A stretch of DNA of 64,000 bases from Macrostomum lignano (taxonomy: Eukaryota). A program made the translations under genes and the position numbers. The first letter of the stretch is position 1, and every line of letters begins with the position of its first letter. Below, in pieces: positions 1 to 63,780 of the stretch. The notes beneath the pieces are model-generated. The model was not told the DNA's origin. It ran no database searches and saw only the letters and a program-made list of their open reading frames with translations. The stretch spans positions 204,484 through 268,483 of the forward strand of contig NIVC01000244.1 in NCBI GenBank assembly GCA_002269645.1, read 5' to 3'.

Positions 1-18
1 AAAACTCTAGGGAATTAC

Positions 19-12871
<12,853 letters not shown>

Positions 12872-37604: not shown

Positions 37605-39290
37605 ACTCTAGTCTCTCACTCTAGCATGTCACTCTAGTCTCTCACCCTAGCCTCTCACTCTAGTCTGTCACTCTAGCCTCTTACTCTAGCCTAGCATGTC
37701 ACTCTAGCCTGTCACTCTAGCCTCTCACTCTAGCCTGTCACTCTAGCCTCTCACTCTAGCCTCTCACTCTAGTCTCTCACTCTAGTCTCTCACTCTAGCA
37801 TCTCACTCTAGCCTGTCACTCTAGCCTCTCACTCTAGCCTGTCACTCTAGCCTGTCACTCTAGCCTCTCACTCTAGCCTCTCACTCTAGCATGTCACTCT
37901 AGCCTCTCACTCTAGCCTATCACTCTAGCCTGTCACTCTAGCCTGTCACTCTAGCCTCTCAATCTAGTCTCTCACTCTAGCCTGTCACTCTAGCCTCTCA
38001 CTCTAGCCTGTCACTCTAGCCTGTCACTATAGCCTCTCACTCTAGCCTGTCACTCTAGCCTCTCACTCTAGCCTGTCACTCTAGCATGTCACTCTAGCCT
38101 CTCACTCTAGCCTCTCATTCTAGCCTGTCACTCTAGCCCGTCACTCTAGCCTCTTACTCTAGCCTGTCACTATAGCTTGTCACTCTAGCCTCTCACTCTA
38201 GCCTCTCAATCTAGTCTCTCACTCTAGTCTGTCACTCTAGCCTCTCACTCTAGCCTAGCATGTCACTCTAGCCTGTCACTCTAGCCTGTCACTCTAGCCT
38301 CTCAATCTAGTCTCTCACTCTAGCCTGTCACTCTAGCCTCTCACTCTAGCCTGTCACTCTAGCCTGTCACTATAGCCTCTCACTCTAGCCTGTCACTCTA
38401 GCCTCTCACTCTAGCCTGTCACTCTAGCATGTCACTCTAGCCTCTCACTCTAGCCTCTCATTCTAGCCTGTCACTCTAGCCCGTCACTCTAGCTTGTCAC
38501 TCTAGCCTCTCACTCTAGCCTGTCACTCTAGCATCTCACTCTAGCCTGTCACTCTAGCCTGTCACTCTAGCCTCTCACTCTAGCCTCTCACTCTAGCCTG
38601 TCACTCTAGCCTCTCACTCTAGCCTGTCACTATAGCTTGTCACTCTAGCCTCTCACTCTAGCCTGTCACTCTAGCATGTCACTCTAGCCTCTCACTCTAG
38701 CCTCTCAATCTAGTCTCTCACTCTAGTCTGTCACTCTAGCCTCTCACTTTAGCCTAGCATGTCACTCTAGCCTGTCACTCTAGCCTCTCACTCTAGCCTG
38801 TCACTCTAGCATCTCACTCTAGCCTGTCACTCTAGCCTCTCACTCTAGCCTCTCACTCTAGCCTCTCACTCTAGCCTGTCGTTCCAGCCTCTCACTCTAG
38901 CCTGTCACTATAGCTTGTCACTCTAGCCTCTCACTCTAGCCTGTCACTATAGCTTGTCACTCTAGCCTCTCACTCTAGCCTGTCACTCTAGCCTGTCACT
39001 CTAGCCTCTCACTCTAGCCTGTCACTATAGCTTGTCACTCTAGCCTCTCACTCTAGTCTGTCACTCTAGCCTGTCACTCTAGCCTCTCACTCTAGCCTCT
39101 CAATCTAGCCTAGCATGTCACTCTAGCCTCTCACTTTAGTCTCTAGTCTCTAGTCTGACTAGTCTGTCACTCTAGTCTGTCACTCTAGCCTGTCACTCTA
39201 GCCTGTCACTCTAGCCTCTCACTCTAGCCGGTCACTCTAGCCTGTCACTCTAGCCTGTCACTCTAGCCTGTCACTCTAGCCTCTCACTCT
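37605..39290. repeat. 13-bp minisatellite
   Basis: Unit CACTCTAGCCT(C/G)T. Confidence 0.97.
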
Positions 39291-47000: not shown

Positions 47001-50000
47001 TTAAACTCGGGACCATAGACTGGGATTAACAATGGGATCACAGGCTGGGATAAAGGACTTTGTATAGAGCTAGCAGCTGAAAGTACCAGAACAGCAACAC
47101 GCAGCTACTAAAGTCCCAACAGTTGATAGACTGTATTCTCTCTCCCGCAGACGCACCTGCAGGTTGTAATCCTTGCCCGCGGCTGCAGCTCGCGACCGTC
47201 CTTTGTCCAGAACACCTCCGGCGGCGGCAGGCCGTCAAAGGTGCAGCTGAGCTTGACAAAGCCGCCCTCCTGAATGAAGCGATTCCGCAGCGGGAAGGTG
47301 ACCTTGGCCGGCCTGTCCGGCTCCTTCCACAGCTCGGGCAGCGGCGACGGCGACTTCCGGGGTCTTGGCGTCCTCTCGGCCGGCTCCAGGTTGTCCTTGG
47401 GGGCCATCGGCTCCACGTGCAACTTGATGGTGGCCTCCTTGCGGCCGAAGGAGTTTTCCGCTTTCACCTGGCGTGGGATTGCGAGGCTATCTTTGTCCAG
47501 AGTGGGCTATCAATGATTTCCTAAATGTCCAGAGTTGGCTATCTATGATTTCCTAAATGTCCAGAGTTGGCTATCAATGATTTCCTAAATGTCCAGAGTG
47601 GGCTATCTATGATTTCCTAAATGTCCAGAGTGGGCTATCAATGATTTCCTAAATCTTCAGAGTGGGCTATCAATGATTTCCTAAATGTCCAGAGTTGGCT
47701 ATCTATGATTTCCTAAATGTCCAGAGTTGGCTATCTATGATTTCCTAAATGTCCAGAGTTGGCTATCTATGATTTCATAAATGTCCAGAGTTGGCTATCA
47801 ATGATTTCCTAAATGTCCAGAGTTGGCTATCTATGATTTCCTAAATGTCCAGAGTTGGCTATCTATGATTTCCTAAATGTCCAGAGTGGGCTATCAATGA
47901 TTTCCTAAATGTCCAGAGTTGGCTATCTATGATTTCCTAAATGTCCAGAGTTGGCTATCTATGATTTCCTAAATGTCCAGAGTTGGCTATCTATGATTTC
48001 CTAAATGTCCAGAGTTGGCTATCTATGATTTCCTAAATGTCCAGAGTTGGCTATCTATGATTTCCTAAATGTCCAGAGTTGGCTATCAATGATTTCCTAA
48101 ATGTCCAGAGTTGGCTATCTATGATTTCCTAAATGTCCAGAGTTGGCTATCTATGATTTCCTAAATGTCCAGAGTTGGCTATCTATGATTTCCTAAATGT
48201 CCAGAGTTGGCTATCTATGATTTCCTAAATGTCCAGAGTGGGCTATCTATGATTTCCTAAATGTCCAGAGTTGGCTATCTATAATTTCCTAAATGTCCAG
48301 AGTGGGCTATCTATGATTTCCTAAATGTCCAGAGTTGGCTATCTATGATTTCCTAAATCTTCAGAGTGGGCTATCAATGATTTCCTAAATCTTCAGAGTG
48401 GGCTATCAATGATTTCCTAAATCTTCAGAGTTGGCTATCAATGATTTCCTAAATGTCCAGAGTTGGCTATCAATGATTTCCTAAATGTCCAGAGTTGGCT
48501 ATCTATGATTTCCTAAATGTCCAGAGTTGGCTATCTATGATTTCCTAAATGTCCAGAGTTGGCTATCTATGATTTCCTAAATGTCCAGAGTGGGCTATCT
48601 ATGATTTCCTAAATGTCCAGAGTTGGCTATCTATGATTTCCTAAATGTCCAGAGTTGGCTATCTATGATTTCCTAAATCTTCAGAGTGGGCTATCAATGA
48701 TTTCCTAAATCTTCAGAGTGGGCTATCAATGATTTCCTAAATCTTCAGAGTTGGCTATCAATGATTTCCTAAATGTCCAGAGTTGGCTATCAATGATTTC
48801 CTAAATGTCCAGAGTTGGCTATCTATGATTTCCTAAATGTCCAGAGTTGGCTATCTATGGTTTCCTAAATGTCCAGAGTTGGCTATCTATGGTTTCCTAA
48901 ATGTCCAGAGTTGGCTATCTATGATTTCCTAAATGTCCAGAGTTGGCTATCAATGATTTCCTAAATGTCCAGAGTTGGCTATCTATGATTTCCTAAATGT
49001 CCAGAGTGGGCTATCTATGATTTCCTAAATGTCCAGAGTGGGCTATCAATGATTTCCTAAATGTCCAGAGTTGGCTATCTATGATTTCCTAAATGTCCAG
49101 AGTTGGCTATCTATGATTTCCTAAATGTCCAGAGTTGGCTATCTATGATTTCCTAAATGTCCAGAGTTGGCTATCTATGATTTCCTAAATGTCCAGAGTT
49201 GGCTATCAATGATTTCCTAAATGTCCAGAGTTGGCTATCTATGATTTCCTAAATGTCCAGAGTTGGCTATCTATGATTTCCTAAATGTCCAGAGTTGGCT
49301 ATCTATGATTTCCTAAATGTCCAGAGTTGGCTATCTATGATTTCCTAAATGTCCAGAGTGGGCTATCTATGATTTCCTAAATGTCCAGAGTTGGCTATCT
49401 ATAATTTCCTAAATGTCCAGAGTGGGCTATCTATGATTTCCTAAATGTCCAGAGTTGGCTATCTATGATTTCCTAAATCTTCAGAGTGGGCTATCAATGA
49501 TTTCCTAAATCTTCAGAGTGGGCTATCAATGATTTCCTAAATCTTCAGAGTGGGCTATCAATGATTTCCTAAATGTCCAGAGTTGACTATCAATGATTTC
49601 CTAAATGTCCAGAGTTGGCTATCTATGATTTCCTAAATGTCCAGAGTTGGCTATCTATGATTTCCTAAATGTCCAGAGTGGGCTATCTATGATTTCCTAA
49701 ATGTCCAGAGTGGGCTATCTATGATTTCCTAAATGTCCAGAGTTGGCTATCTATGATTTCCTAAATGTCCAGAGTGGGCTATCTATGATTTCCTAAATCT
49801 TCAGAGTGGGCTATCAATGATTTCCTAAATCTTCAGAGTGGGCTATCAATGATTTCCTAAATCTTCAGAGTTGGCTATCAATGATTTCCTAAATGTCCAG
49901 AGTTGGCTATCAATGATTTCCTAAATGTCCAGAGTTGGCTATCTATGATTTCCTAAATGTCCAGAGTTGGCTATCTATGGTTTCCTAAATGTCCAGAGTT

Positions 50001-53000
50001 GGCTATCTATGATTTCCTAAATGTCCAGAGTTGGCTATCTATGATTTCCTAAATGTCCAGAGTGGGCTATCTATGGTTTCCTAAATATTCAGAGTTCGAT
50101 GCCGAAAAATGTCAAACTCACCAGTCTAAAATGTGACATAAAAATTAACAACGTTGAGAGTTCATCAGTAACTCACTTTGATACCTAAAAATCCTTAATT
50201 TAATTACTGCCATCAAAACAATGCCATCAAGTCACCTGGTAGTCCCCTCCGTCCTCCGGCTTGACACGGTTGATCTTTAGCGAGAAGTCGTGTCCGGCGT
50301 AGCGCTGCATGTACTTCACCGACTGCATCAGCGCCTCGTCGTTCCTAGCCCAGGTGACAATGGGTGGCGAGATTGACAGCACCTTGCACTCGAACACGGC
50401 GTTCTGGCCCTCCAGGCAGTAGGCGTTCTTTGAGCGAAGCACGAAACGGGGCACGGCCTCGCGACGGTCTGGGGATTTTGATGGCATTTATCAGTTTGGA
50501 TGGCTGCGTCATATACACGTAGAGACTAGTGGCTTCCCTAACAGTCATATAGAGACTAGTGGCTTCCCTAACAGTCATATAGAGACTAGTGGCTTCCCTA
50601 ACAGTCATATAGAGACTAGTGGCTTCCCTAACAGTCATATAGAGACTAGTGGCTTCCCTAACAGTCATGTAGAGACTAGTGGCTTCCCTAACAGTCATAT
50701 AGAGACTAGTGGCTTCCCTAACAGTCATGTAGAGACTAGTGGCTTCCCTAACAGTCATATAGAGACTAGTGGCTTCCCTAACAGTCATATAGAGACTAGT
50801 GGCTTCCCTAACAGTCATATACAGACTAGTGGCTTCCCATACGGTCACAGAGAGTGGCTTCCCACTGGTCATAGAGATTTGCTTCCCACTGGTCATAGAG
50901 ATTCGCTTCCCACTGGTCATAGAGATTCGCTTCCCACTGGTCATAGAGATTCGCTTCCCACTGGTCATAGAGATTCGCTTCCCACTGGTCATAGAGATGA
51001 TTAGCTTCTCCTACTGTCATAAAGAGTGGTTTTGCCCTGGTACTCACCAAAGCTGGTCTCGTGCATCTGGAACTCTTTCATTCTCAGCTTTCGCAACGAG
51101 CTAAAGTCGGCCAGTCGAGCAATGCCCAGATTGCCGCCAAACCAATTAGGCTGCAAAAAAAGTTGAAATTCAGCGATAGTCTACTTATTTTGAGTAGAAG
51201 ATACTGAGATTGGCGAGTATTTTTTGAGATTATGTTCTTAATCTGCATCTCCTAATCGGTTAATTCCAAGTGCTTACATGCAGATCTTGCATCTTCTGCC
51301 GTAGTTTATCGTAGCGGCTGGCGGGAATCCTCTTGTCCAGACCTTCGGCGGCCCGCTGCAGCCACGGATGGTCCAGGGCCTCGTGCACAGTCAGCCGTTT
51401 TTCTGGCCGTCTGACTAGCAGGCTCTTGATGAAGTCCCGCGCCTCGTCTGACACGCTGGCGAAAGCGTCCCGATCGAAGTCCCAGTCGCACTTTTTCACG
51501 TTGCCAAGAGTCTCGTAGTCGTCATTGCCAGCGAATGGCGACAAACCGCTTAGCCTGGAATGGAGAGGACAGCAGTGTGTCTATTAGAGTGTGTCTATCG
51601 GAGTGTGTCTATTGGAGTGTGTCTATCGGAGTGTGTCTATTGGAGTGTGTCTATTGGAGTGTGTCTATCGGAGTGTGTCTATTGGAGTGTGTCTATCGGA
51701 GTGTGTCTATCGGAGTGTGTCTATCGGAGTGTGTCTATTGGAGTGTGTATATTGGAGTGTGTCTATCGGAGTGTGTCTATCGGAGTGTGTCTATCGGAGT
51801 GTGTCTATCGGAGTGTGTCTATTGGAGTGTGTATATTGGAGTGTGTCTATCGGAGTGTGTCTATTGGAGTGTGTCTATTGGAGTTTGTCTATTGGAGTGT
51901 GTCTATTGGAGTTTGTCTATTGGAGTGTGTCTATTGGAGTGTGTCTATTGGAGTGTGTCTATTGGAGTGTGTCTATTGGAGTGTGTCTATTGGAGTGTGT
52001 CTATTGGAGTGTGTCTATCGGAGTGTGTCTATTGGAGTGTGTCTATTGGAGTGTGTCTATCGGAGTGTGTCTATTGGAGTGTGTCTATTGGAGTGTGTCT
52101 ATCGGAGTGTGTCTATCGGAGTGTGTCTATTGGAGTGTGTCTATTGGAGTGTGTCTATTGGAGTGTGTCTATTGGAGTGTGTCTATCGGAGTGTGTCTAT
52201 TGGAGTGTGTCTATTGGAGTGTGTCTATTGGAGTGTGTCTATTGGAGCAGTGCCTATTGGAGCAGTGCCTATTGGAACAGTGCCTATTGGAGCAGTGCCT
52301 ATTGGAACAGTGCCTATTGGAACAGTGCCTATTGGAACAGTGCCTATTGGAACAGTGCCTATTGGAGCAGTGCCTATTGGAGCAGTGCCTATTGGAACAG
52401 TGCCTATTGGAGCAGTGCCTATTGGAACAGTGTCTATTGGAGCAGTGCCTATTGGAACAGTGTCTATTGGAGCAGTGCCTATTGGAACAGTGCCTATTGG
52501 AACAGTGCCTATTGGAACAGTGCCTTTTGGAACAGTGCCTATTGGAACAGTGCCTATTGGAACAATGCCTATTGGAGCAGTGCCTTTTGGAACAATGCCT
52601 ATTGGAACAATTGTCCCGGTCCGGCCGCACACTCACAGCACGTAGGCCAGCACTCCAACCGCCCACATGTCCGTGTAGAACCCGACGCCGTCATTGTCGG
52701 CGATCTCTGGTGCGGCGAACTCGGCAGTCGCGGTGGTCACCTTCACCGTCTCGTTGGGATTCAGGCGGGTGGCCAAGCCGAAGTCGATGACCTTGATGCT
52801 GGTGGACTTCGACGTCTCGCATATGAGATTCTCCGGCTTAATGTCCAGGTGCACAATGCCCTGCTCGTGCATGTGCTTGAGCCCGTCGCACACCTGGCGC
52901 ATGTACTTGATCACCTCCGCCTCGGACATTTTGTACGAGTCGTCGGCGATGCGATCGAACAGCTCGCCACCAGAAAGAAACTCCATGATGAGCACCATCT

Positions 53001-56000
53001 CGTTCACGTCGTCGTAGACGTCATGCAGGTTAATGAGTTTGGGATGGTGCAGTGCGTTCATGATGCTCACCTCGTTGCGCACCGTCTGCTTGTCCAGCGA
53101 GTAAGGCGTGTCGATGAACTTCGCCACGAATATCTGGCCGGTGGCCTTCTCCTTGCAGCGGTGCACCACACCGAAGGCGCCGCTGCCAAGCTCCTCTAGG
53201 ATCTCGTAGTCGTCGTACACCGAGCCGGTCTTGATGCTGACGGGGTAGGGCCGGTGCCTGTCCCACAGGTTGCTGTAGCAGGAGTCGTAGTTGCTGGGCT
53301 TCGGCCCGTCGTGGCCGCGTTTGCCGCCGAGCTCCGAGCGGACGTCGCCGGCCCGGCGGGCCTGGACTCGCGGCTCGGCCAGGCGGTAGGGCCCGACGGA
53401 CGGCGACGGGTCACTGCGGCCGTAGAGATTCTCGGCGATCACGCGGAACTCGTAGTCTTTGTCGCGCAGCAGACTGTCAACCGACGCCTGGGCGAAGCGG
53501 GACTGGGCGCAGCGGACCCAACTGCCCGATGGGAGCTCCCGCTTTTCGATGTCGTAACCGCTGATGTACACTCCGCTCTGCTCTGGGTCCAGCGCCGGCT
53601 GCCAGGACAGCACAATGTTGGTGTCGGTGACAGCCTCCGTGCGGAGGCTCTTGGGCGGATCGGGCCGGTCGTTGACGGTTACCTCGATGCTGGCCGAGGC
53701 GGCGCCGATGTCGTTCTCCAGTGTCAGACTGTAGACGCCCGAGTCCTCGCGGCTGAGGTCGTTCACGGTGAGGATGCAGTGGCGCTCCTTCTGTTCGATT
53801 TCGAACTTTCTACCCGGCTTCAGCTCGACTCCGTTGAGCTTCCAGACGGCGCTCGGTTTCGGATATGCGGTGAACGGCAGCTTGATGGTGAGGTTGTCGC
53901 CCTTGTCCATGACCGTCGGCGCGTCAAATCTCGCCGGCTTGCGGATCTTCGGCTCCGACCGGATGGTCAGGTCGGCCCGGCTGGCGCGCGACCCGACGCG
54001 GTTGCTGACGCGGACGCTGTACTCGTCGGCGTCGTCGATGGAGCAGTTGTTCACCACCAGGTAGTAGCGGTCGCCCTCCTTTCCGATGTCGTACTTGCTG
54101 GAGGGCGCGAGCTCGCGGACGCCCTTGGACCAGACTACGTCGAACGGCGGGCTGCCGTTCAGCTGCACCTCGAACTCCGCCCGCTTGCCCTCGTTGGCCT
54201 GCTGGCGCTTCAGCTGGGTGGTGAACTGCGGCAGGGACTGCGCCTTCGGGTCCTTCACTGTCACCTTGCGAGACGCGCCAGACGGCTGGCTCAGCCCGGC
54301 TTCGTTCTCAGCGAACACGCGGAACTCGTAGTCTTTGTCCTCGATGAGGTTGGGGATGTTGCAGGTCGTGTTGTGAATCGGCGCGAAGTTCACCCGCGTC
54401 CAGGCGGCGTCGCTGGCTCCGGCCTCGCGCTTCTCCACGTAGTAGCCGGTGATCTTGCCGCCGCCGTCCGACACCGGGCGACTCCAGCTCAGCGACACGA
54501 AGTCGGCGCCGACCTCCTCGGCCTCCGGCTCGCCGGGTGCCTGCGGCTTGTCTGCCGAATGCGAAATTTTGGCAGTTTAGGGCACAATGTCCAGATTAAA
54601 TTAGGGCCTGTAATATTGGTTTTCACCTTCTGTTTCAAAATGTATCCTACCCTGAACTGGAGGGTGAAACTAGGGTGAACTGGAGCTAAGTTTAATGTAT
54701 TCGCTTGCTCACGGCTGACTGCTGCATGTCTGCTGACGGAATTATTGAGATACTCGTCGGCAATAACCGCAACAACCCCGGCTTAACCTGTGCAGTGTTA
54801 GCGGCAAATACGTAGAGCTAGAGACCCTCTCCAAGCCCCTAAAAATCCCCAACACACTACTCACAGTAACCAGGCCCTAGTAAAAATTCTAACCCTCTGG
54901 ACACGATATCTAACATTCTGTGCTGGATTTGCAATACAATGGTCTGAAAATCATAATGAAATTTTCGGCAACCAACCAAACGGCATTTTGGCCACAATGG
55001 GCTCCGTTGTCTCTAGCGGCTCGCTGCTTCCGTTCTCATTGACGGCAAATACGCGGAAACTGTACTCAGAGTTCTCCACCAGGCCCTGGACGTCGACGCT
55101 TGTATCCTAGGTAGGCGTGTTAAGTTGCTATGAATAAATCTTCACAATTGACTGGTAGCTGTATTTACTTTGATCTTTAAAAGTCTGCCTGTTTGCAGTG
55201 GCTTCTAGCCTAACTAGCTGGTTAAAGGAAAAGTTAAACGGTCGGTAGGCAGGTGTGCAAACGAAAAACTTTTAGTTGACGCAAGACCAATAGTTGGTGG
55301 AGAGATTCAAACTCGTTAAATATATATATATAGTTTTATATTATACTACAGGCAGTGTCAGACAAAGACACTAAGATACTACTTGTCATATCTGGCTTGT
55401 CTGTCATAGTCTAACACTGACAATGCATTCTAATAGGCAGCAACATGCCTTGCTGGCTACAGCTATATCGGTTGTAGCTCTGCTAATCCGAGTGGCACAA
55501 ACTGCGCCTGTGACTGACACAACGTGGTCTACTGACACTGCTAGTTACGCTAGCTCTACGGCTGCTCCCACGTCAGGGAACAATGTCACTATGGCAACGG
55601 TTGTGACTACGTCGATAGGGACTACTGTTTCCTTCTCTGACAGTACTACATCTGATGTGCTGGGAACACCTCCAGACCCGACAACATTCCCAACACCCGC
55701 TGACACGACAACATACCCAACCCCTTCAGACCCGACAACATTCCCAACACCTCCAGACCCGACAACATACCCAACACCTCCAGACCCGACAACATACCCA
55801 ACACCTTCAGACCCGACAACATTCCCAACACCTTCAGACCCGACAACATACCCAACACCTTCAGACCCGACAACATACCCAACACCTCCAGACCCGACAA
55901 CATTCCCAACACCTCCAGACCCGACAACATACCCAACACCTCCAGACCCGACAACATTCCCAACACCTCCAGACCCGACAACATTCTCAACACCTCCAGA

Positions 56001-59000
56001 CCCGACAACATTCTCAACACCTCCAGACCCGACAACATACCCAACACCTCCAGACCCGACAACATTCCCAACACCTTCAGACTCGACAACATTCCCAACA
56101 CCCGCTGACACGACAACATTCCCAACACCTCCAGACCCGACAACATTTCCAACACCTCCAGACCCGACAACATACCCAACACCTCCAGACCCGACAACAT
56201 ACCCAACACCTTCAGACCCGACAACATTCCCAACACCTTCAGACCCGACAACATACCCAACACCTTCAGACCCGACAACATACCCAACACCTCCAGACCC
56301 GACAACATTCCCAACACCTCCAGACCCGACAACATACCCAACACCTCCAGACCCGACAACATTCCCAACACCTCCAGACCCGACAACATTCTCAACACCT
56401 CCAGACCCGACAACATTCTCAACACCTCCAGACCCGACAACATACCCAACACCTCCAGACCCGACAACATTCCCAACACCTTCAGACTCGACAACATTCC
56501 CAACACCCGCTGACACGACAACATTCCCAACACCTCCAGACCCGACAACATTTCCAACACCTCCAGACCCGACAACATTCCCAACACCCGCTGACACGAC
56601 AACATTCCCAACACCAACAAACCCGACAACATTCGTAACGCCGGCTGCAGAGAATATTTCAACAACTCTAAGCGCTGCAGAAATGGAGCAGAAACGAGTG
56701 GAAGTTGTGATCAGAAACTACCAAACCGCTTCAACTAACGTGGGAGCGTACTTGGTACCGGTGCTCCTTGCAGGCGGGTTCATATTTATCATAGTCTCGT
56801 TAATTAGAACCGCAATTAACGCTGGGTTGTAAAGAACTACGGATGGAGGCGTTATCTTGACGCTCGTTGACATTTTTTCAATAAGCTACTGTAAACTGTA
56901 GATAAATTACTCCATATTCTAATACTGAACGAGAGTTTAACCTGATTTTATAGAAAATGTATCCATGATTAATACGTTATTGAAAGCAGCAAACTGCAGC
57001 AAAGCAAAGCAAAAATAAACCGATTTATTTCCTTCTCGCCTCACCTTACAAAATGACGCAACAGTCAGCCAGTTCTCCTTGTCCTTTTCTTTGCGCTCAA
57101 CAACGTAGTGCGTCACCTTGGAGCCGCCGTCATCGCGCGGCGGCTTCCAGCTGAGCTTGCACGCATTCTTTGTGACGTCAGAGGCCTGCAGAGGCCCGCC
57201 AGCTGCGCTCGGTTTTGCTTTCACCTTCAGGCTAAACGGCGCAGCCGTAGAGCCGCTCTCGTTAGCCAGCTCCAACTTGTAGTCGCCGGCATCCTCCCGC
57301 TGCAGGTCCTTGATCTGCACCACAACGTAGTCGTCGAACTCTTGCAGCTTAACGTTGGGCGACTCACTTAGGTCTTTGCTGCCCTTCTTCAGGCCCAACT
57401 TCAGCGGTCCATTGCCGGAGAAAAACACTTTGAACTTAACACCGTCTCCGACGTCTCCGGACTGGTCTGGCACGGCCCGCTCCAGCTTCGGTGGCCGCTG
57501 AACGTTCAGACGAGCACTGGTGGATTCCCGACCCGCCTTGTTAGCCAACTCACAGGTGATCTCTCCGGCGTCACTCTCCGAGAGGTCGTTCAGGGTTAGC
57601 GTTGCCACTTCACCATCGCTACTGATCTGCGCCCGAGCGGAAGGCCGCAGCTCGATGCCGTTCTTGAACCAGCGCACCTCCGGCGGCGGCTTTCCATCGA
57701 TTCGGCAAGTGAAGGTTGCCGACCCACCGACTGCCCCGGTGGCCGCCTGCAGCCGGCTGAGGAACTCGGGCGACGCACCCGCCTTCCGGTCTTCGATCTT
57801 CGTCGGCAGCGACGGAGGAGACGGGTCGCCTTCGCCAGACGCGTTCAGAGCAGTCACTCGAAACTCGTACTCTTCGTCTTCGTCCAGCCCATCGATCAGA
57901 GCGTCACTGGCCGAGCCTGGAACAGTGGCGGCCGTCTCCCAGTCACCATTTTTCTTTCGCTTCTCAACTTTGAATCCTGTCAAGCGACCGCCGCCCTCGT
58001 TTAGCGGCTTGGTCCACTCCAGCTCCGCAAAGTTCTTGCCAGTCTTGGTGACCGCCGGAGTTCCCGGATTTCCTGGTGGACTAATCTTCGATTTGGTCTC
58101 CACCGGCTTGGTGGCAGCGCTGGGCTCGCCCAGGCCGGCATCATTTTTGGCGCGGACACGAAATTCGTATTTAGTATTCTTGTCGAGTCCAGGCACTGTC
58201 ATCTTGTTGCCCTTGACTGGGAAGTCATTCGCCTTCTTCCACTTGTTGCTGCTCGGCTCTTTGTACTCAACAACGTAGCCTTGAACTTTGTTGCCGCCGT
58301 CGCTACGTGGCTTTTTCCAAGACAACGAAACCGAGCTCTCATCGACGCCCGTCACATCGAGTCCCTCCGGCGCGCCAGGCGGCTGGAAGGCAAGCTTCGG
58401 CGTCACCGCCGTCTCGAGCTCCAGCGGCTCGCTAAGCCCGTGCAGATTCTCCGCACGAACTCGAAACTTCACAGGCTTGCCTTCGTCCAGGCCGAATGCC
58501 TCATACTCCGGCTTCCTGACGAACTTTGACAGCGGAACCCACTCGCCCGTGCGCGGGTCCTGCTTCTCAACGACATAGTTTTCAACTGGCGCTCCGCCGT
58601 CGTCCTTCGGTGGCCGCCAGGTAAGCGTGCAACTGTCGGGTCCGATTTTGGACACCTCCAGCGGACCTTCAGGCATCGCCGGTTTGTCCACGATATTAAC
58701 TTTTGGCTCTATCGAGTCGCGGCCTGCTCGGTTCTTGAGCGTGACAGTATACTTCCCTTCGTCAGCCTTAACAGCCTTTTTGCAGACGATGACCACTTCC
58801 GATGTCTCCTCACGAATTTCAAAGCGCTCTACTGGTACCGCGGTAGCGCCATGGAAGCACTCGACATTCTCTGGCGGAGAGCCTTCGAACGGAATGCGAA
58901 GCTTGAACTCTTCGCCAGCGGCAGCTGTGACGTCCTTGGTAGCGAAATCGGATAGAATTCGAGGCGCAGTTTGCGGCGCTTGCACTTTAACCGCATCGGT

Positions 59001-62000
59001 GGGCTCGCTGGGCTCACCTGGGCCAGCTTTGTTCACAGGAGTGACGCGAAACTCGAACTCCTTGCCTTCCGGCAAGTTTTTGGCGGTGAAGTTTGTACTG
59101 GACACTGGGGTTACTGAGGCCTTCGACCAGGATTTATCACCCTTAGCTCGCTTCTCCACAATGTAGCCAGTGACGGGGGAGCCGCCATTGTTCCTTGGCG
59201 GCTGCCAGCTGAGCGCTACACTGTCTGCGGTCACTTCCTCCACCGCTGGCTGGTTGCAGGCGGACGGTGGATCAAATGGCAGCTTCGGTGTGACTGGCGA
59301 GATCGTCTGTAGGGGTTCGCCGCGGCCCTGGGCGTTCTCAGCCATTACTCGAAACTCATAAGGCTTGCCCTCTTCGAGGTTCTTCACAGTGGCGGTCGGT
59401 GAGCTCAAGAAGCTGCTAACGGGTAGCCATTCATCTGTGCCCTTAATTCGTTTCTCAAGCACATAGTTGGACACGGGCTCACCGCCGTCCGACTTTGGCG
59501 GTGCCCACTTCAGCGTCACCTGGTTGGCGTCAATGTCAGTGGCTTCCAGTGGGCCTGTGCAAGGACCGGGCTTATCAAGCACGGTCACTCGAAGCGAGCC
59601 AGTGTCCTTGCCCATGGAGTTTCGCAGCGTGATTTTGTACTCTCCGCTGTTGCTACCAGTCGCCTTGGCAACCGTGTAAACTAACTGCCCAGCATCGCCA
59701 TCGGGTGTCTCCGTGATACTCAGCTTACCCTCCGACGTGGCGTCAAAGTCCTTATCGTCCTTCTCGAATTCGGCCGTCGGCTTGGGGAAGCCGGTGTAGG
59801 GGATCTTGATCACCAAGTCTTGGCCGGCCTTGATTGTCAGGTCGCGCAGTCCGGACAGGTCGAGCCGCGGCGCTTCAGGCTGGTTCTCCGCCTTGAGTGT
59901 CTTCGTAGGCCGGGTCGGTTCGCCCGGTCCGGCCTCGTTCTCCGCGCGCACCCGAAACTGCGCCTCCTCACCCTCGGCCATCGGCACAAAGGCGGACCGC
60001 TCGTTGGCTGGCACGGTCTTCACTGGCACCCATTCGCCGTCCGGATTCTTCTTCTCTACTACGTAGTCCTTCACCTTGCCGCCGCCTTCGTTCTTCGGCT
60101 TAGCCCAGCTGAGCTGCACGCCGTCCTTCTTCTGCTTGTCAACATTGAGGTCGCCCGGAGGCCCGGCTGGGAACACCGGGTCGCGAACTATCAGCGGCTG
60201 GGTTGCTTTCGACGGCTTGCCAAGTCCAGCGGCGTTGACAGCGCAAACGCGGAACTCGTACTCGCGACCCTCGTTGAGGCTAGTGACATTGAAGGATAGT
60301 TTCTCCGTTGATGGCACAAACGGGGTCGCCTTCTCCCAGTCGCTGCCCTTCTGCTTCTTTTCTATCACGTAGCCAACAATTGGATTGCCGCCGTCACTTT
60401 TCGGCGGCTTCCAAGCCAGGGACACCTGGAATCGGTCGTACTTTTCGATGGTCAGGTGCTCCGGCGCGTCTGGCGCGTCGAAAGGATTTTTGGCTAGAAT
60501 CGCGCCGCCACTCGTCTCCAGCGGCTCGCTGACACCGAACCTGTTGACTGCCTTGACTCTGAACCTGTAGCGCTTGCCTTCAACGAGCTGTTTCACTGCA
60601 CAGGTGGGCTGGTCGGTGGCGCCTGGCACTTTTTCCCAGATTCCGCTGCCCTCCTCACACATTTCCACAATGTAGTCGAGTATCTCGCAGCCACCAGTGT
60701 CCTTCGGCGGCTTCCATTGCAGCCGACACGAATCCGCCAGTAGGTCTTTCACTTCCAGCGGGCCCTCAGGCGGATCCGGTTTGTCCATCACAACAACACG
60801 GATGCTAGCATCCTCCTTTCCGTGCTCATTTGTCAGCGAGACATGATAAGTACCAGCATCGGCCTTTTTTGCGCTGTCCACACGAAAGCCAGTGAGTTCC
60901 TCAGTGTCCGTCACCCTGGCGGCGGCCTGCATCTGTGCTCTGGAGTCTCTGGTCCACGTGATGGTCGGCTTCGGAGCGCCCTCGATCGGGATCTGAATTT
61001 CGATTGGCTCGCCGGCGCGGACGCGAATCTCTCTGCCCGGCCCGAGTCCCAGGGAGTCCAGGTTCAGCTTCGGTGCCGCCTTCGCTGGCTTGGCCTTGAC
61101 GTGCTTGCTGGGTCCCGAAGGCTGGCTGGGTCCGGCCTTGTTCACTGCGGTCACTCTATACTCGTATTCTTTGTTCTCTTTTACAGTCTCGTCGGTGAAT
61201 TCCAGTTCTACCACCCGGTCTCTGGTCACCTTGGTCCACCTGGTGCCCTTGATTTCCTTACGCTCGATGATGTAACCGAGAATCGGCGCTCCACCATCGC
61301 TGCGCGGCGGCTTGTAGGCGATCTTCACGAACGTCTTGTTGTGGTCCAGAATCTCGGGCGGGGACGGTGCGTCCGGTTCTTCGAATGGATTCTTGATCTT
61401 CGTTGGCTCCTCCGTCTCCAAGGGTTCACCAACTCCCTGAGCGGTTTCCGCTGACACACGAAAGAGATACTCGTGGCCCTCCTGCAGCTTATTCACCGTG
61501 AATGTTGTGCCAGCAACCATCTCAGACACAGTCTCCCACTCTCGCTTTTTCAAATCGTACTTCTGCAAAACATAATTTTGAATTGGACTGCCCCCGTCAT
61601 CTTTGGGCGGCTTCCACGACAACTGACAGCTATTCTTAGTTACTTCTGACACCTGGAGCGGCCCCTCTGGTCGGGACGGCTTTCCTAAGACAACTACTTC
61701 AATTTCAGCGGAGTCCTCGCCGACTTCATTAGTGACTGTCAGACGGTAGAGCCCGGTGTGCTTGCGCAAGCCTTCCTTAATAGTCACCTTGGAACAGCCG
61801 ATGTCGGACTCGACTTGAATATCCTCCGCAAGCGGATTGTCGCCCACCACCCAAACTGGCGTTGGCGGCGGCTCACCAATGAATTTGAGCTCCAGAACAA
61901 TTGGCGCACCCGCCTTTATATTAACGGGCTTGATGCCCATGCGATCGATGCGCGGCTTAAGGAAGCGCGGCTTGGCTACCACTGGCCCGGCCGGGGCGCT

Positions 62001-63780
62001 CGGGTCCGAGCTGCCGGCTTTGTTCACCGCGATCACCCGGAACTCGTACTCCTGGCCCTCTTTCAGGCCTTCGACTTTTGCTTTCAGATCTTTCGGACCA
62101 ACCTCCTTGGCAACGGTCCAAGTGGTTGATGTCTTGCTGCGACTCTCAATCACATATTTTAACACTGGCGAACCGTTGTCGTTCTTTGGAGCAGTCCAAT
62201 CCAGCTCGGCAAAGTTCTTGTCCCAGTCCAGCAGTTTGCACGGACCGGGAGGATCTGGCGGATCCCAGGGATCTCGAGCTAAGGTGGCTTTCGTGGTCTC
62301 CAACCAGTCCGAGTGACCCTCTGCGTTAACCGCCCTCACACGAAACTTGTACTTGTTGCCCTCCACTAGACCCGTCACCCGGCACTCCTCTTTTTTCACA
62401 GACTTAAACGGCTTCCACTGTCCATCGGCAACGTCCATGAGCTCGACATCGTATGCAGTGATTGGCGAGCCGCCATCGTCTTCTGGCGGGTCCCACATCA
62501 GGGTGCAGCCGTCGTGAGCCAGCTCCATTACGTCCAGTGGCTCACCTGGCTTATCTGGACGATCTAGTACCTCGAATTCGAATGGCACGTACTCCTCGCC
62601 GGCACTGTTGAACAGCTTCAGCTGGTACTTGCCCCGATCTGCTCTTGTCGCGCCCCGTGCGTCGTCCAGCACCAGTTGCACCTGGCCGGGACCGGGGATG
62701 GCTTTTAGCTGCACCGTCTCCGGCACAGGTTCACCGTTGCGGATCAAGGCGACATTCGGTATGGGAAAGCCCTTGACCGGGATGGAGCAAGAGAACGGCT
62801 GGCCCTTCTTGACGCGCATCATCTGGGCCAGCTTGCCGGCCAGACAGGGCGGCTTCTCGCATTCCTCAACCTGCATATTGCACTTGCAGCCGTGTTTGCC
62901 AACCTTGACCGAGTACTCGGCCTCGTCATCCAGTTCGAGACTGTTGAATATTAGATAGTAATCGTCTTTGTTCTGTTTGACCTCGATCCGCTCGTTCGGT
63001 TGAATTGGTTCGCCGTTCTTGAACCAATATACCTCGTGCTGCTTTGGATTGCGCAACGACACCATGAGCTCCTTTTTGCGCAGCTCGATGCCCTTAGTGT
63101 CGTATAGGCTCTTCTTGAACTCGACGTCGGCTATGAAGGACGAATTAAGCGGAGGCAATTGTGTTAATAGGTTTCATACCAAGGAATATTTGATTATAGT
63201 AAATGGCTCACGTTTTACGGTCAATTTTGCTACTGTAGTCTTCTTCGCTGTGCGACAGATAATTACGCCATGCCAGTCCATGTCCAGATTGAAGACTGTC
63301 AGCTTTCGCTTGGTCCTCTGAAGAGACTCCATCTTGTACTGTGTCTCATCCTTCTCTTCCAGTTTCTGAATAAATTTCGGGGCGTTAATTTAATCAATAA
63401 TGCATCCTGTAAACAGTCCCTAAACTAGTAGAAAAGGCTATGAAATTTTTAAGATACGAGTACACCAGGTAGCAATGCTGGTCTCACCTGCAGCTTGGAT
63501 ACGTCCATCGGATTTACATCCGGGTTTGAGCAGAAGAACCACTTCACCACAGCGTCCTTCTCGTTCACTTCGCATTCGAATACCACCTCTTTGTCACCTT
63601 CGAAACATTCTTGAGGCCGAAGGTTGCGGTTGAAAAACCAATTAGGATCATCCACGATGATGTCAGTGTAGGTCTCGTCGCCCTCCACCAAGCAGGCGAA
63701 CTCAGTCTCGTCTTCGTCGCGAGCTTTGACTATGCGAAGGATGCAGCGATTCTCGCGTCGCTTCATCTCGTATCGATTCG
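41042..63780 (-). CDS. unc-22: Twitchin/projectin (titin-family giant Ig/Fn3 kinase), 3' part; 5' end outside the window
   Basis: Exons 63780-63488, 63366-63214, 63130-57045, 55106-54977, 54551-52637, 51554-51278, 51150-51048, 50468-50236, 47467-47157, 46658-45786, 44832-44571, 41674-41484, 41056-41042 (ending ILPC*). Ig/Fn3 super-repeats; kinase GSGAFGVV, FVAKFI, HLDIKPEN, IDFGLA, TTATAEFAAPE; regulatory tail ARLADFSSLRK; then RREAVPRF and five C-terminal Ig domains. Confidence 0.97.
41088..41408. repeat. 21-bp minisatellite (last twitchin intron)
   Basis: Unit GGGTCTAGAGGTTCCAGCACC. Confidence 0.95.
41700..44485. repeat. 31-bp minisatellite, about 90 units (twitchin intron)
   Basis: Unit AAATAGAGCTGTGTCCACAGTGTGATA(G/A)TTG; stop-free on the minus strand, giving 900-1015-aa pseudo-ORFs. 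Confidence 0.98.
45030..45765. repeat. ~45-bp dimeric (22+23) minisatellite (twitchin intron)
   Basis: Alternating GTGTCAGATAGGAGTCACTATTA and GTGTCAGATG.GGGTCATAGTT. Confidence 0.92.
46676..47000. repeat. 12-bp minisatellite (twitchin intron)
   Basis: Unit GGTTCAGCTCAG. Confidence 0.97.
47497..50092. repeat. 32-bp minisatellite, about 80 units (twitchin intron)
   Basis: Unit ATGATTTCCTAAATGTCCAGAGTTGGCTATCT. Confidence 0.98.
50520..50998. repeat. Adjacent 30-bp and 24-bp minisatellites (twitchin intron)
   Basis: AGAGACTAGTGGCTTCCCTAACAGTCATAT followed by CTTCCCACTGGTCATAGAGATTCG. Confidence 0.95.
51575..52612. repeat. Adjacent 14-bp and 15-bp minisatellites filling the intron within the kinase domain
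   Basis: TATTGGAGTGTGTC up to ~52245, then TATTGGA(A/G)CAGTGCC. Confidence 0.97.
55423..56832 (+). CDS. Nested antisense intronless gene: type-I membrane mucin-like protein with ~36 nine-residue (D/S)PTT(F/Y)PTP(P/S/A)-type repeats
   Basis: One 469-aa frame contains a signal peptide (ALLATAISVVALLIRVAQTAP), N-glycosylation sequons NVT and NIS, the repeat block, a TM helix VGAYLVPVLLAGGFIFIIVSLI and a short tail RTAINAGL*. It lies entirely within twitchin intron 57044-55107. Confidence 0.8.
   Translation: MHSNRQQHALLATAISVVALLIRVAQTAPVTDTTWSTDTASYASSTAAPTSGNNVTMATVVTTSIGTTVSFSDSTTSDVLGTPPDPTTFPTPADTTTYPTPSDPTTFPTPPDPTTYPTPPDPTTYPTPSDPTTFPTPSDPTTYPTPSDPTTYPTPPDPTTFPTPPDPTTYPTPPDPTTFPTPPDPTTFSTPPDPTTFSTPPDPTTYPTPPDPTTFPTPSDSTTFPTPADTTTFPTPPDPTTFPTPPDPTTYPTPPDPTTYPTPSDPTTFPTPSDPTTYPTPSDPTTYPTPPDPTTFPTPPDPTTYPTPPDPTTFPTPPDPTTFSTPPDPTTFSTPPDPTTYPTPPDPTTFPTPSDSTTFPTPADTTTFPTPPDPTTFPTPPDPTTFPTPADTTTFPTPTNPTTFVTPAAENISTTLSAAEMEQKRVEVVIRNYQTASTNVGAYLVPVLLAGGFIFIIVSLIRTAINAGL

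What the first reader, a model, noticed from the sequence alone, without database searches (positions are those of the whole stretch)
55423..56832. Antisense gene nested in a twitchin intron that splits an Fn3 domain: membrane-anchored 9-mer Thr/Pro/aromatic repeat protein
Seen: the host intron (57044-55107) interrupts an Fn3 domain (WLTVASFCK|DTSVDVQGL). On the opposite strand it holds a complete ATG-to-stop ORF with signal peptide, ~36 units of a 27-nt repeat, a TM helix and an 8-aa tail. A 405-nt (15-unit) block is duplicated nearly exactly (55741 vs 56146). Unlike the neighbouring intronic satellites, the repeat has a 3n unit and non-repetitive in-frame signal and TM flanks, which argues for real coding. 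Inference: an intronless (possibly retroposed) orphan surface mucin, or a satellite domesticated into a coding sequence. The F/Y at every ninth residue may give a regular rod or adhesive surface.
Basis: partly seen in the sequence, partly recalled or inferred. Interest (0 to 1): 0.7.

Follow-up and report, generated by a model that had tools for sequence, protein, structure and literature searches.

The report
Orphan membrane mucin gene inside twitchin intron
A small intron of a twitchin (giant muscle protein) gene carries, on the opposite strand, a complete single-exon reading frame for a membrane-anchored mucin-like protein with no detectable relatives. This is most likely a real but ordinary lineage-specific nested gene, not a chance product of an intronic satellite.

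Summary
An ATG-to-stop ORF of 469 aa lies at 55423..56832 (+). It sits inside a 1938-nt phase-0 intron (57044..55107, − strand) that splits an Fn3 domain of a twitchin-like gene. The ORF holds 36 indel-free 27-nt units (TPPDPTTFP). A 15-unit block is duplicated, exact over about 430 nt.

An open repeat proves nothing: four of six frames are open, no single substitution makes a stop, and many neighbouring satellites also have 3n units.

The unique flanks carry the evidence. They show no nucleotide similarity to the repeat. They nevertheless encode a signal-peptide-like N-terminus, a 46% Ser/Thr stretch (0 of 3806 open non-coding windows reach this), a 22-aa hydrophobic helix and an 8-aa tail. 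Only one other ORF of 60 in the window has both hydrophobic ends, trivially, because it is the (AGAC)n repeat itself. Codon usage matches a neighbouring genuine mucin gene, not twitchin.

No homologue of the flanks was found anywhere, but the source organism's lineage is itself absent from the databases. Expression and conservation therefore remain untested.

Verdict: probably a real, lineage-restricted, cell-surface mucin-like nested gene, a new member of a known kind. I found no evidence for retroposition or for birth from a satellite. Interest is modest.

The parts
55107..57044 (-). Host intron of the twitchin-like gene (1938 nt, phase 0, GTGAG...CTAG) that splits an Fn3 domain. The nested ORF fills 73% of it.
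   Evidence: Splicing restores a full fn3 match (5-83 of 84, 62.7 bits).
57045..63158 (-). Upstream host exon encoding Fn3/Ig modules of twitchin, ending ...WLTVASFCK.
   Evidence: (fn3 E=2.8e-177, I-set E=1.2e-99).
54981..55106 (-). Downstream host exon (second half of the Fn3: DTSVDVQGLVENSEYSFRVFAVNENG...). Its 3' end is approximate.
55321..55333 (+). TATA-like run (TATATATATATAG) about 100 nt upstream of the ATG. Candidate core promoter only.
   Evidence: The motif density of 0.43/kb in the window gives roughly a 13% chance of one in 316 nt, so this is weak evidence.
55423..56832 (+). Complete single-exon ORF of 469 aa with an ACAATGC start context (A at -3) and a TAA stop.
55423..55503 (+). 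Residues 1-27, a signal-peptide-like N-terminus: n-region MHSNRQQH, h-region ALLATAISVVALLI, then RVAQT|AP.
   Evidence: maximum 12-aa Kyte-Doolittle hydropathy is 2.73, reached by only 3 of 139 ATG-led open non-coding windows. AlphaFold helix at residues 3-26. The cleavage site is inferred from the -3/-1 rule and was not run through SignalP.
55504..55665 (+). Residues 28-81, a non-repetitive Ser/Thr-rich stretch (46% S+T) with an NVT sequon at N54.
   Evidence: 0 of 3806 open non-coding windows reach 46% S+T (maximum 35%); no nucleotide similarity to the 27-mer (z = -1.6). Thr codons are mixed (ACT/ACG/ACA/ACC), against 96% ACA in the repeat.
55666..56637 (+). 36 units of 27 nt, residues 82-405: TP[PSA]D[PST]TT[FY][PS]. 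Composition is 37% Pro, 35% Thr and 11% Asp.
55747..56151 (+). Units 4-18, the first copy of the 405-nt higher-order duplication.
56152..56556 (+). Units 19-33, the second copy of the 405-nt duplication, unit-for-unit identical to units 4-18.
56638..56739 (+). Residues 406-439, a non-repetitive juxtamembrane stalk (TPAAENISTTLSAAEMEQKRVEVVIRNYQTASTN) with an NIS sequon at N411.
   Evidence: a helix from residue 418 onward.
56740..56805 (+). Residues 440-461, VGAYLVPVLLAGGFIFIIVSLI: a 22-aa hydrophobic helix, either a transmembrane anchor or, less likely, part of a GPI signal.
   Evidence: 19-aa hydropathy is 2.56, reached by only 1 of 322 stop-preceded open non-coding windows; helix with pLDDT of about 80-88.
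56806..56832 (+). Residues 462-469, RTAINAGL, an 8-aa tail starting with Arg, followed by the stop codon.
57014..57019 (+). AATAAA, 182 nt after the stop and 26 nt before the host exon. Candidate poly(A) signal that would keep the transcript inside the intron.
   Evidence: The motif density of 0.65/kb gives roughly a 13% chance of one in 212 nt, so this is weak evidence.

Best explanation
The ORF is a genuine, intronless (at least in its coding part), lineage-restricted protein-coding gene. It is nested antisense in a twitchin intron.

Its product would be a type I membrane mucin-like glycoprotein. A cleavable signal peptide (about 27 aa) directs it into the secretory pathway. A roughly 410-aa ectodomain has no Cys, is 39% Ser+Thr and 30% Pro, and carries 43 acidic against 3 basic residues. 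Such a domain would be densely O-glycosylated and would adopt an extended, stiff, negatively charged 'bottle-brush' conformation, roughly 80-100 nm long by analogy with known mucin domains. A single C-terminal helix with an 8-aa tail holds it in the plasma membrane.

The tail is too short to signal. The protein would therefore act through its ectodomain, as a glycocalyx, barrier, lubrication or anti-adhesion (or ligand-display) molecule. Its length would be tuned by unequal crossing-over in the 27-nt array; the exact 405-nt duplication is a recent event of that kind.

Shown here: the ORF, the repeat anatomy, the nesting, the non-random protein-like flanks, the mucin-like codon usage and the absence of homologues. 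Inferred: transcription, signal cleavage, O-glycosylation, surface location and function.
For: (1) Both unique flanks are open: 81 and 64 codons from ATG to repeat and from repeat to stop. Only 4.1% and 6.7% of equal-length non-coding windows are open.

(2) The hydrophobic segments sit where a type I membrane protein needs them. The N-terminal segment scores 2.73 (3 of 139 controls reach it). The C-terminal segment scores 2.56 (1 of 322 controls reach it).

(3) Of 60 ATG ORFs of 80 aa or more in the window, only this one and the trivial (AGAC)n read-through have both hydrophobic ends.

(4) The non-repetitive residues 28-81 are 46% Ser+Thr, with 0 of 3806 controls reaching this. They use mixed synonymous codons and have no DNA similarity to the repeat. 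The composition is therefore a protein-level property, not decayed repeat.

(5) With a codon model trained on the neighbouring multi-exon mucin gene, the N flank beats 1579 of 1579 open non-coding windows and the C flank beats 96% of them. Both fall within the range of true coding windows.

(6) GC3 of the flanks (0.43-0.48) matches that mucin gene (0.40).

(7) AlphaFold, run on the single sequence, gives helix 3-26, disorder 27-417 and helix 418-466, with pLDDT up to 88 in the anchor.

(8) The protein meets published operational mucin thresholds (ST at least 20%, P at least 5%, at least 4 repeats, repeats at least one third of length; PMC2515642). Here ST is 36%, P is 26%, there are 36 repeats, and repeats make up 69% of the length.

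(9) A TATA-like motif about 100 nt upstream, an A at -3 of the ATG, and AATAAA 182 nt downstream all lie inside the intron.

(10) Nested genes in long introns and orphan lineage-specific mucins are both common (PMC3814207, PMC5174743, PMC9417175).
Against: There is no transcript, protein or cross-species evidence of any kind. Exact look-ups and homology searches found nothing.

With a codon model trained on twitchin, the flanks score like non-coding sequence (-0.23 and -0.16, against a coding 5th percentile of about 0.5).

Within the array, substitutions give no sign of purifying selection: about 5 synonymous and 10 non-synonymous distinct changes. No stop can be reached by a single substitution, so the intact frame there is expected by default.

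Other satellites in the window also have 3n units, and some have flanks open for 48-64 codons.

The promoter and poly(A) motifs are individually expected by chance at about 13% each.

The control samples for the hydrophobic segments are small (139 and 322 windows), and the tests are not fully independent.
Confidence: 0.7

Rival explanations
1. This is a non-coding intronic minisatellite whose open frame, ATG and stop are chance. The 'signal peptide' and 'TM helix' are accidents of intron sequence.
For: The genome region is packed with tandem arrays (76 TRF rows, at least 19 distinct arrays) and several have 3n periods. The 27-mer is open in 4 of 6 frames. Other arrays have flanks open for 48-64 codons. 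A twitchin-trained codon score places the flanks among non-coding windows. No homologue exists.
Against: The joint empirical frequency of open N flank (0.041), open C flank (0.067), N-terminal hydrophobic run (0.022) and C-terminal hydrophobic run (0.003) is about 2e-7, before adding the Ser/Thr-rich flank (fewer than 1 in 3806). The only other ORF in the window with both hydrophobic ends is a microsatellite artefact. The flanks are unrelated to the repeat. They score as coding under a mucin-trained model.
Confidence: 0.08
2. This is a silent or dying copy: a duplicated or retroposed copy of a mucin gene that lives elsewhere in the genome. It is still intact but is not expressed from this site.
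For: It is a single exon. It sits in an intron with only 316 nt upstream and 212 nt downstream for regulatory signals. Young duplicates inserted in introns are the usual source of nested genes (PMC5174743).
Against: There is no poly(A) tract after the 3' end, no direct repeat of 8 nt or more shared by the two flanks, and no similarity of the flanks to anything else in the window. The ORF has no frameshift or stop in 147 unique codons. TATA-like and AATAAA motifs are in place. No parental copy could be sought, because the genome is not available.
Confidence: 0.12
3. De novo origin: an intronic 27-nt minisatellite expanded in a stop-free frame and recruited adjacent intron sequence as signal peptide and anchor. 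This would resemble the way cod antifreeze glycoprotein arose from repeated non-coding DNA (my recollection of that case, not checked here).
For: The locus lies in a satellite-prone region. The protein has no homologue in 1.84 billion representatives. The array is young and dynamic, with an exact 405-nt duplication. Codon usage is unlike that of the host gene.
Against: Obtaining a signal-like start, a 54-aa Ser/Thr-rich segment and a 22-aa anchor from random intron sequence is just as improbable as the chance hypothesis. The lack of homologues is expected anyway, because even twitchin finds nothing closer than 46% identity. In the mammalian orphan mucins studied so far, repeats were gained by pre-existing secreted proteins (PMC9417175).
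Confidence: 0.07
4. Same gene, different anchoring. The C-terminal hydrophobic segment is a GPI-attachment signal (omega site in ...QTASTN...), so the mature mucin is lipid-anchored, as in many parasite surface mucins.
For: Small residues (A, S, T, N, G) lie just upstream of the hydrophobic run, which sits only 8 residues from the C-terminus. There is no real cytoplasmic domain.
Against: The hydrophobic run is a full 22 aa. It is followed by Arg and 7 more residues, the classic positive-inside stop-transfer arrangement. The spacer between candidate omega sites and the hydrophobic run is short. AlphaFold models one continuous helix, 418-466. No GPI predictor could be run.
Confidence: 0.2
5. The ORF is the main coding exon of a larger + strand gene with a further upstream (5'UTR or coding) exon. 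It would then not be strictly intronless, nor confined to this intron.
For: A pyrimidine-rich tract ending in AG (about 55390-55409) lies just upstream of the ATG and resembles a 3' splice acceptor (by inspection).
Against: An in-frame stop at 55372 and an ATG followed immediately by a signal-like sequence make this the natural translation start. A TATA-like element lies about 100 nt upstream within the intron.
Confidence: 0.12

Closest known systems
Small cell-surface sialomucins of vertebrates (CD43/leukosialin, PSGL-1, CD164, endomucin, the CD34/podocalyxin family)
   Same: The architecture matches: signal peptide, long O-glycosylatable Pro/Thr/Ser domain with short tandem repeats, single transmembrane helix. 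From my own knowledge, not checked here, CD43 and PSGL-1 also have their coding sequence in a single exon, and the decamer array of PSGL-1 varies in copy number.
   Different: There is no sequence relationship. No Pfam family reached a meaningful score and none was above its cut-off. There was no PDB hit at E of 1 or less and no homologue in large-scale searches. The tail here is only 8 aa, whereas those proteins have signalling or ERM-binding cytoplasmic domains. The repeat is strongly acidic and carries an aromatic residue at every ninth position.
Classical membrane-tethered mucins (MUC1, MUC3, MUC4, MUC12, MUC13, MUC16, MUC17)
   Same: A tandem-repeat PTS domain that makes up most of the protein, membrane anchoring, and repeat-number dynamics.
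   Different: There is no SEA, NIDO/AMOP/vWD or EGF module between the repeats and the membrane. There is no Cys at all. The protein is much smaller.
Schistosoma mansoni polymorphic mucins (SmPoMuc)
   Same: A signal peptide followed by a variable number of 9-aa tandem repeats encoded by 27-bp units in an invertebrate. The family is lineage-specific (PMC2576457).
   Different: In SmPoMuc each 27-bp unit is a separate exon inside a genomic repeat of about 1 kb. The gene has 15 exons and a conserved C-terminal domain, and the paper mentions no transmembrane segment (PMC2576457). Here the 36 units are contiguous in one exon and are followed by a membrane anchor. No sequence similarity was detected.
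Lineage-specific 'orphan' mucins arising by gain of PTS repeats ('mucinization')
   Same: Mucins are defined by function rather than descent, and new ones arise repeatedly through exonic repeat gain and copy-number change (PMC9417175). This ORF fits that pattern of an orphan with a young, dynamic array.
   Different: The documented cases are secreted mammalian proteins in the SCPP locus with identifiable non-mucin precursors. No precursor can be identified here, and this protein is membrane-anchored.
Nested (intronic) protein-coding genes
   Same: The ORF lies wholly inside an intron of another gene, on the opposite strand, and is short. About 10% of Drosophila genes are nested, and they typically arise by insertion of short young genes into long introns (PMC3814207, PMC5174743).
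   Different: The host intron is short (1.9 kb) and is 73% filled by the ORF. The transcript limits are unknown.
Non-coding intronic minisatellites of the same window
   Same: It is a tandem array with 0% indels, about 92% unit identity and higher-order duplication, like its neighbours.
   Different: It is the only array whose unique flanks continue the frame to an ATG and a stop and encode a signal-like start, a Ser/Thr-rich stretch and an anchor-like segment.

Membership tests
Mucin / mucin-like protein (operational definition, PTSP-Miner and Lang criteria cited in PMC2515642) | Ser+Thr at least 20% and Pro at least 5% of the protein | tested here: met
   S+T is 35.6% and P is 26.2% of the 469 aa.
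Mucin / mucin-like protein (operational definition) | At least 4 tandem PTS repeats occupying at least one third of the protein | tested here: met
   36 repeats cover 324 of 469 aa, or 69%.
Mucin / mucin-like protein (operational definition) | Entry into the secretory pathway (signal peptide) | tested here: inconclusive
   An n/h/c-like N-terminus, hydropathy of 2.73 and an AlphaFold helix at residues 3-26 are present. No dedicated predictor was available and no experiment was done.
Mucin / mucin-like protein (operational definition) | Dense O-glycosylation of the PTS domain | not testable with these tools
   This needs glycoproteomics or lectin and mobility assays.
SEA-type membrane-tethered mucins (MUC1-like) | A SEA (or NIDO-AMOP-vWD) module between the repeats and the transmembrane helix | tested here: not met
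   The Pfam scan of the whole protein and of the C-terminal 73 aa shows no such domain, even at E of 10 or less.
Vertebrate sialomucin families (CD34/podocalyxin, CD164, endomucin, leukosialin) | Sequence homology of the conserved juxtamembrane, transmembrane and cytoplasmic regions | tested here: not met
   No Pfam family reached its cut-off. phmmer of the C-terminal 73 aa against 1.84 billion representatives gave 0 hits at E of 0.001 or less.
SmPoMuc family | A 27-bp repeat exon embedded in a genomic repeat of about 1 kb, plus a conserved multi-exon C-terminal domain | tested here: not met
   The repeats are contiguous with no intervening introns. There are no homologues. Family features are taken from PMC2576457.
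Nested gene | The coding sequence lies entirely within one intron of a host gene | tested here: met
   The ORF at 55423-56832 lies inside the intron at 55107-57044, whose splicing restores an Fn3 domain.
Nested gene | An independent transcription unit (own promoter and poly(A) site, and a transcript) | not testable with these tools
   Only motif-level hints exist: TATA-like at 55321 and AATAAA at 57014. No expression data for the organism are in any collection.
Processed retrogene | A poly(A) tract at the 3' end and flanking target-site duplications | tested here: not met
   There is no A-run after the AATAAA and no shared k-mer of 8 nt or more between the 316-nt upstream and 212-nt downstream flanks. 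No flank similarity was found elsewhere in the window.
Twitchin (the host gene label) | An Fn3/Ig super-repeat protein with a C-terminal MLCK-like kinase closest to twitchin kinases | tested here: met
   fn3 and I-set matches. A Pkinase domain is split over 52636-54576 and 51263-51580. The best solved kinase matches are twitchin 3uto, 1kob and 1koa (331-410 bits), against titin kinase 1tki at 174 bits.

The most novel reading that the evidence does not exclude
The gene was born in place. A 27-nt intronic minisatellite with a stop-free Thr/Pro frame expanded inside a twitchin intron and captured neighbouring intron sequence as a signal peptide and membrane anchor. That would make a new surface mucin from non-coding DNA, an invertebrate, membrane-bound parallel to the de novo origin of cod antifreeze glycoprotein. 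Its antisense position could also couple its expression to, or interfere with, twitchin transcription in muscle.
Probability: 0.07. Interest if true: 0.7.

Novelty: new member of a known kind. Interest (0 to 1): 0.3.

Why it matters
If it is real, this is an unannotated, taxonomically restricted surface glycoprotein that homology-based annotation cannot find. Repeat masking of a satellite-rich intron would probably erase it.

It shows that, in genomes full of intronic minisatellites, the unique flanks of an array can separate a coding VNTR from junk. The repeat period and the open frame of the repeat cannot.

Biologically it would add one more independently evolved mucin. It would also offer a compact sense/antisense pair, a muscle giant and a surface mucin, for studying transcriptional interference between nested genes. 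None of this changes current understanding, because both nested genes and orphan mucins are well documented.

Tried and rejected
1. Exact-sequence look-ups of the 469-aa product in the gene-position index and in the 15-billion-protein collection found it not on record.

2. A word-indexed homology search with the whole protein gave only two low-complexity matches: a bacterial lipoprotein-like YPTPPDPQ repeat protein and a T/P-rich repeat protein. I rejected both as compositional.

3. The same search with the two unique flanks joined gave nothing at E of 0.1 or less.

4. An exhaustive phmmer search of the C-terminal 73 aa against 1.84 billion representatives gave 0 hits.

5. Back-translated pattern scans of viral contigs (C flank) and metagenome contigs (N flank) found no relatives.

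6. I tried to fetch the orthologous intron through the adjacent twitchin exon. The best protein hit was 46% identical (a monogenean titin). Metagenome loci were at most 53% identical, and that over only 29 residues. The organism's lineage is therefore absent and no comparative test is possible.

7. Pfam at E of 10 or less and the PDB at E of 1 or less gave nothing meaningful.

8. An Rfam scan of the whole window gave nothing.

9. A codon-usage test trained on twitchin made the flanks look non-coding. I set it aside as a discriminator once the neighbouring genuine mucin gene proved to have the same low GC3 as the ORF.

10. Synonymous versus non-synonymous variation among the repeat units is uninformative. 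The ratio is about 5:10, and no stop is reachable by one substitution.

11. Searches for retroposon or transposon signatures (target-site duplication, poly(A) tail, inverted or direct terminal repeats, dispersed copies in the window) found none.

12. A tblastn search for in-window paralogues of the flanks found none.

Full report
**What is there**

The + strand carries an ATG-to-TAA ORF at 55423..56832 (469 aa). The nearest upstream in-frame stop is at 55372, and there is no earlier in-frame ATG.

Tandem Repeats Finder reports one 27-nt array at 55665..56634 with 35.9 copies, 92% matches and no indels. Read in the ORF's codon register there are 36 units from 55666, with consensus ACACCTCCAGACCCGACAACATTCCCA = TPPDPTTFP. 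The variants are TP[P/S/A]D[P/S/T]TT[F/Y][P/S].

Units 4-18 are repeated unit for unit as units 19-33. At a lag of 405 nt there is no mismatch between 55744 and 56173. The array therefore underwent a very recent 15-unit duplication. The unit occurs nowhere else in the 64 kb.

**The host gene**

On the − strand a 2073-codon open exon ends ...WLTVASFCK at 57045, followed by GTGAG. At 55107/55106 a CTAG|G acceptor opens DTSVDVQGLVENSEYSFRVFAVNENG....

Joining the two sides gives a full Pfam fn3 match (positions 5-83 of 84, 62.7 bits). The upstream part alone matches only positions 5-42.

The exon carries 13 Fn3 and 8 I-set matches. Further downstream lies a protein kinase domain split over two exons. 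Its best solved relatives are the twitchin kinases 3uto, 1kob and 1koa, well ahead of titin kinase.

The ORF fills 73% of the intron.

**What does not count as evidence**

- The repeat is open in four of six frames.
- None of its nine codons can become a stop by one substitution, so 970 nt without stops or frameshifts is the default outcome.
- The distinct changes among units are about 5 synonymous and 10 non-synonymous, roughly the neutral proportion.
- A 3n unit is not special here. Neighbouring arrays have periods of 21, 21, 21, 12, 30, 24, 15 and 54.
- Some neighbouring arrays have flanks open for 48-64 codons.
- A codon model trained on the twitchin exon (GC3 0.69) scores the ORF's flanks like non-coding DNA.

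**What does count**

All the evidence lies in the 243-nt and 195-nt unique flanks.

1. *Both flanks are open.* In unique non-coding sequence of this window, 4.1% of 243-nt windows and 6.7% of 192-nt windows are open.

2. *The hydrophobic ends are in the right places.* The first 30 residues contain MHSNRQQH-ALLATAISVVALLI-RVAQT|AP, with a 12-aa hydropathy of 2.73. Only 3 of 139 ATG-led open non-coding windows reach that. The last 35 residues contain VGAYLVPVLLAGGFIFIIVSLI followed by RTAINAGL-stop, with a 19-aa hydropathy of 2.56. Only 1 of 322 stop-preceded open windows reaches that.

3. *The ORF is unique in the window.* Among all 60 ATG ORFs of 80 aa or more, only this one and the (AGAC)n read-through have both hydrophobic ends. 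In the read-through the hydrophobicity is the repeat itself.

4. *The N flank is Ser/Thr-rich at the protein level.* Residues 28-81 are non-repetitive and 46% Ser+Thr. None of 3806 open non-coding windows exceeds 35%. This stretch has no nucleotide similarity to the 27-mer (local alignment z = -1.6; the C flank gives z = 1.2). It uses ACT, ACG, ACA and ACC for Thr, whereas the repeat uses ACA 96% of the time. The mucin-like composition continues into unique sequence in the same frame, which a non-coding satellite has no reason to do.

5. *Codon usage matches a genuine mucin gene.* The window also holds an unmistakable multi-exon mucin gene (1-12,900, − strand) whose GC3 is 0.40, like the ORF flanks (0.43-0.48). 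A codon model trained on that gene puts the N flank above all 1579 open non-coding windows and the C flank above 96% of them. Both lie inside the leave-one-exon-out coding range.

6. *The predicted structure fits.* AlphaFold on the single sequence gives helix 3-26, no structure for 27-417, and one helix 418-466 with pLDDT of about 80-88 over the anchor.

7. *Motifs are in place, weakly.* A TATA-like run lies about 100 nt upstream, there is an A at -3 of the ATG, and AATAAA lies 182 nt after the stop and 26 nt before the host exon. These would keep the whole transcription unit within the intron. Each motif has roughly a 13% chance expectation, so this is only mild support.

Multiplying the empirical frequencies of openness and the two hydrophobic ends gives about 2e-7, before the Ser/Thr criterion. 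This is rough, because the control samples are small and the tests are not fully independent. Even so, chance does not plausibly survive correction for the roughly 20 arrays and 6 frames of the window.

**What the protein would be**

The domain order is:

- signal peptide (about 27 aa);
- a 54-aa Ser/Thr-rich segment with an NVT sequon;
- 324 aa of nonamer repeats;
- a 34-aa stalk with an NIS sequon;
- a 22-aa helix;
- an 8-aa tail.

The ectodomain has no Cys. It is 32% Thr, 30% Pro and 7% Ser, with 43 acidic and 3 basic residues. It exceeds the published operational mucin thresholds (PMC2515642).

Established knowledge of mucin domains makes the most likely behaviour dense O-glycosylation. 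That would give an extended, stiff, strongly anionic stalk, tens of nanometres long, anchored in the plasma membrane. With essentially no cytoplasmic domain it would work through the ectodomain, as glycocalyx, barrier, lubrication, anti-adhesion or glycan display.

Array length would change by unequal exchange, as the exact 405-nt duplication shows. These steps are inferred, not shown.

A GPI anchor is a minority alternative. Small residues lie before the hydrophobic run and the tail is very short. Against it, the run is 22 aa, it is followed by Arg plus seven residues, and it is modelled as one long helix.

The regular F/Y at every ninth residue is real. Its significance is unknown. The acidic, membrane-bound context does not resemble the basic Tyr/DOPA adhesive repeats of mussel foot proteins (my own knowledge, not checked here).

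**Relatives and origin**

No relative was found by any of these routes:

- exact look-up;
- word-indexed search with the whole protein, which gave only compositional hits;
- the flanks alone;
- exhaustive phmmer of the C-terminal 73 aa against 1.84 billion representatives;
- viral and metagenome pattern scans;
- Pfam;
- the PDB.

This says little about age. The adjacent, well-conserved twitchin exon finds nothing closer than 46% identity (a monogenean titin). No orthologous locus could be retrieved.

There is no trace of retroposition or of a mobile element. There is no poly(A) tract, no shared k-mer of 8 nt or more between the flanks, no terminal repeats, and no dispersed copies in the window.

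A birth-from-satellite origin is not excluded but has no positive support. It requires the same improbable flanks to arise from intron sequence. In the documented mammalian cases, new mucins formed by repeat gain in pre-existing secreted proteins (PMC9417175).

**Comparison with known things**

Functionally it resembles small membrane sialomucins (CD43 and PSGL-1 type). In repeat size it resembles the 9-aa/27-bp VNTR of Schistosoma SmPoMuc.

It fails the membership tests for all of these:

- it has no SEA or other juxtamembrane module;
- it has no homology to the sialomucin families;
- in SmPoMuc every 27-bp unit is its own exon within a 1-kb genomic repeat and the gene has 15 exons (PMC2576457).

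It fits two broad and well-known categories. One is nested genes: about 10% of Drosophila genes, usually short young genes in introns (PMC3814207, PMC5174743). The other is orphan, lineage-specific mucins (PMC9417175).

**Verdict**

The main remaining risks are that the copy is intact but silent (about 0.12) or a chance ORF (about 0.08).

It is a new member of known kinds, of modest interest. Its main practical lesson is for annotation of satellite-rich genomes.

Noticed in passing
window 449-12892, - strand: A large multi-exon secreted mucin-like gene. At least 11 exons each encode a module of about 100 aa containing Cys (conserved ...GCF.PLP..C... motif) followed by a Thr-rich linker (31-56% S+T). 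No Pfam family passes its cut-off; there is only a sub-threshold 'New_glue' hit. Its GC3 of 0.40 contrasts with 0.69 in twitchin.
   Followed up: partly
window 19409-20179 and 21566-22378, + strand: A 2OG-Fe(II) oxygenase domain (E=1.9e-16) is followed by a class I methyltransferase domain (E=2.5e-13). This is an ALKBH8-like arrangement on the strand opposite to both neighbouring genes. A 21-nt, 41-copy satellite (20192-21055) lies between the two parts.
   Followed up: partly
window 12000-64000: The density of distinct tandem arrays is extraordinary: at least 19 families with periods of 4-54 nt. Examples are a 31-mer x90 at 41699-44501, a 32-mer x81 at 47494-50096, a 23-mer x70 at 35556-37178, a 13-mer x128 at 37603-39290, and (AGAC)133 at 11996-12524. 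Most have 0-2% indels, and many give ORFs of hundreds of codons that are artefacts.
   Followed up: partly
window 51263-51580 and 52636-54576, - strand: The twitchin kinase domain is split by an intron (Pkinase positions 1-189 and 187-263). That intron is almost entirely filled by 14- and 15-nt satellites (51574-52609).
   Followed up: partly
window 55666-56637, - strand (host sense): Read in the host's sense, each 27-nt unit contains GAG|GTGTTG, a 5' splice-site-like motif. The twitchin pre-mRNA therefore carries about 36 decoy donors within this intron. Whether they affect splicing is unknown.
   Followed up: no
window 55390-55409, + strand: A pyrimidine-rich tract ending in AG lies just upstream of the ORF's ATG and could be a 3' splice acceptor. 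The nested gene might therefore have an upstream non-coding exon.
   Followed up: no
window 57045-63158 vs 449-12892: Two neighbouring genes on the same strand differ strongly in codon usage (GC3 0.69 vs 0.40, against an intron GC of 0.42). A single codon model is therefore unsafe for gene finding in this genome.
   Followed up: yes
window 57045-58244, - strand: The best database match of this twitchin exon is only 46% identical (titin of the monogenean Cichlidogyrus casuarinus). The next named hits are rotifer and nematode proteins. The source organism belongs to a lineage not represented in the protein collections, and its identity remains unresolved.
   Followed up: partly
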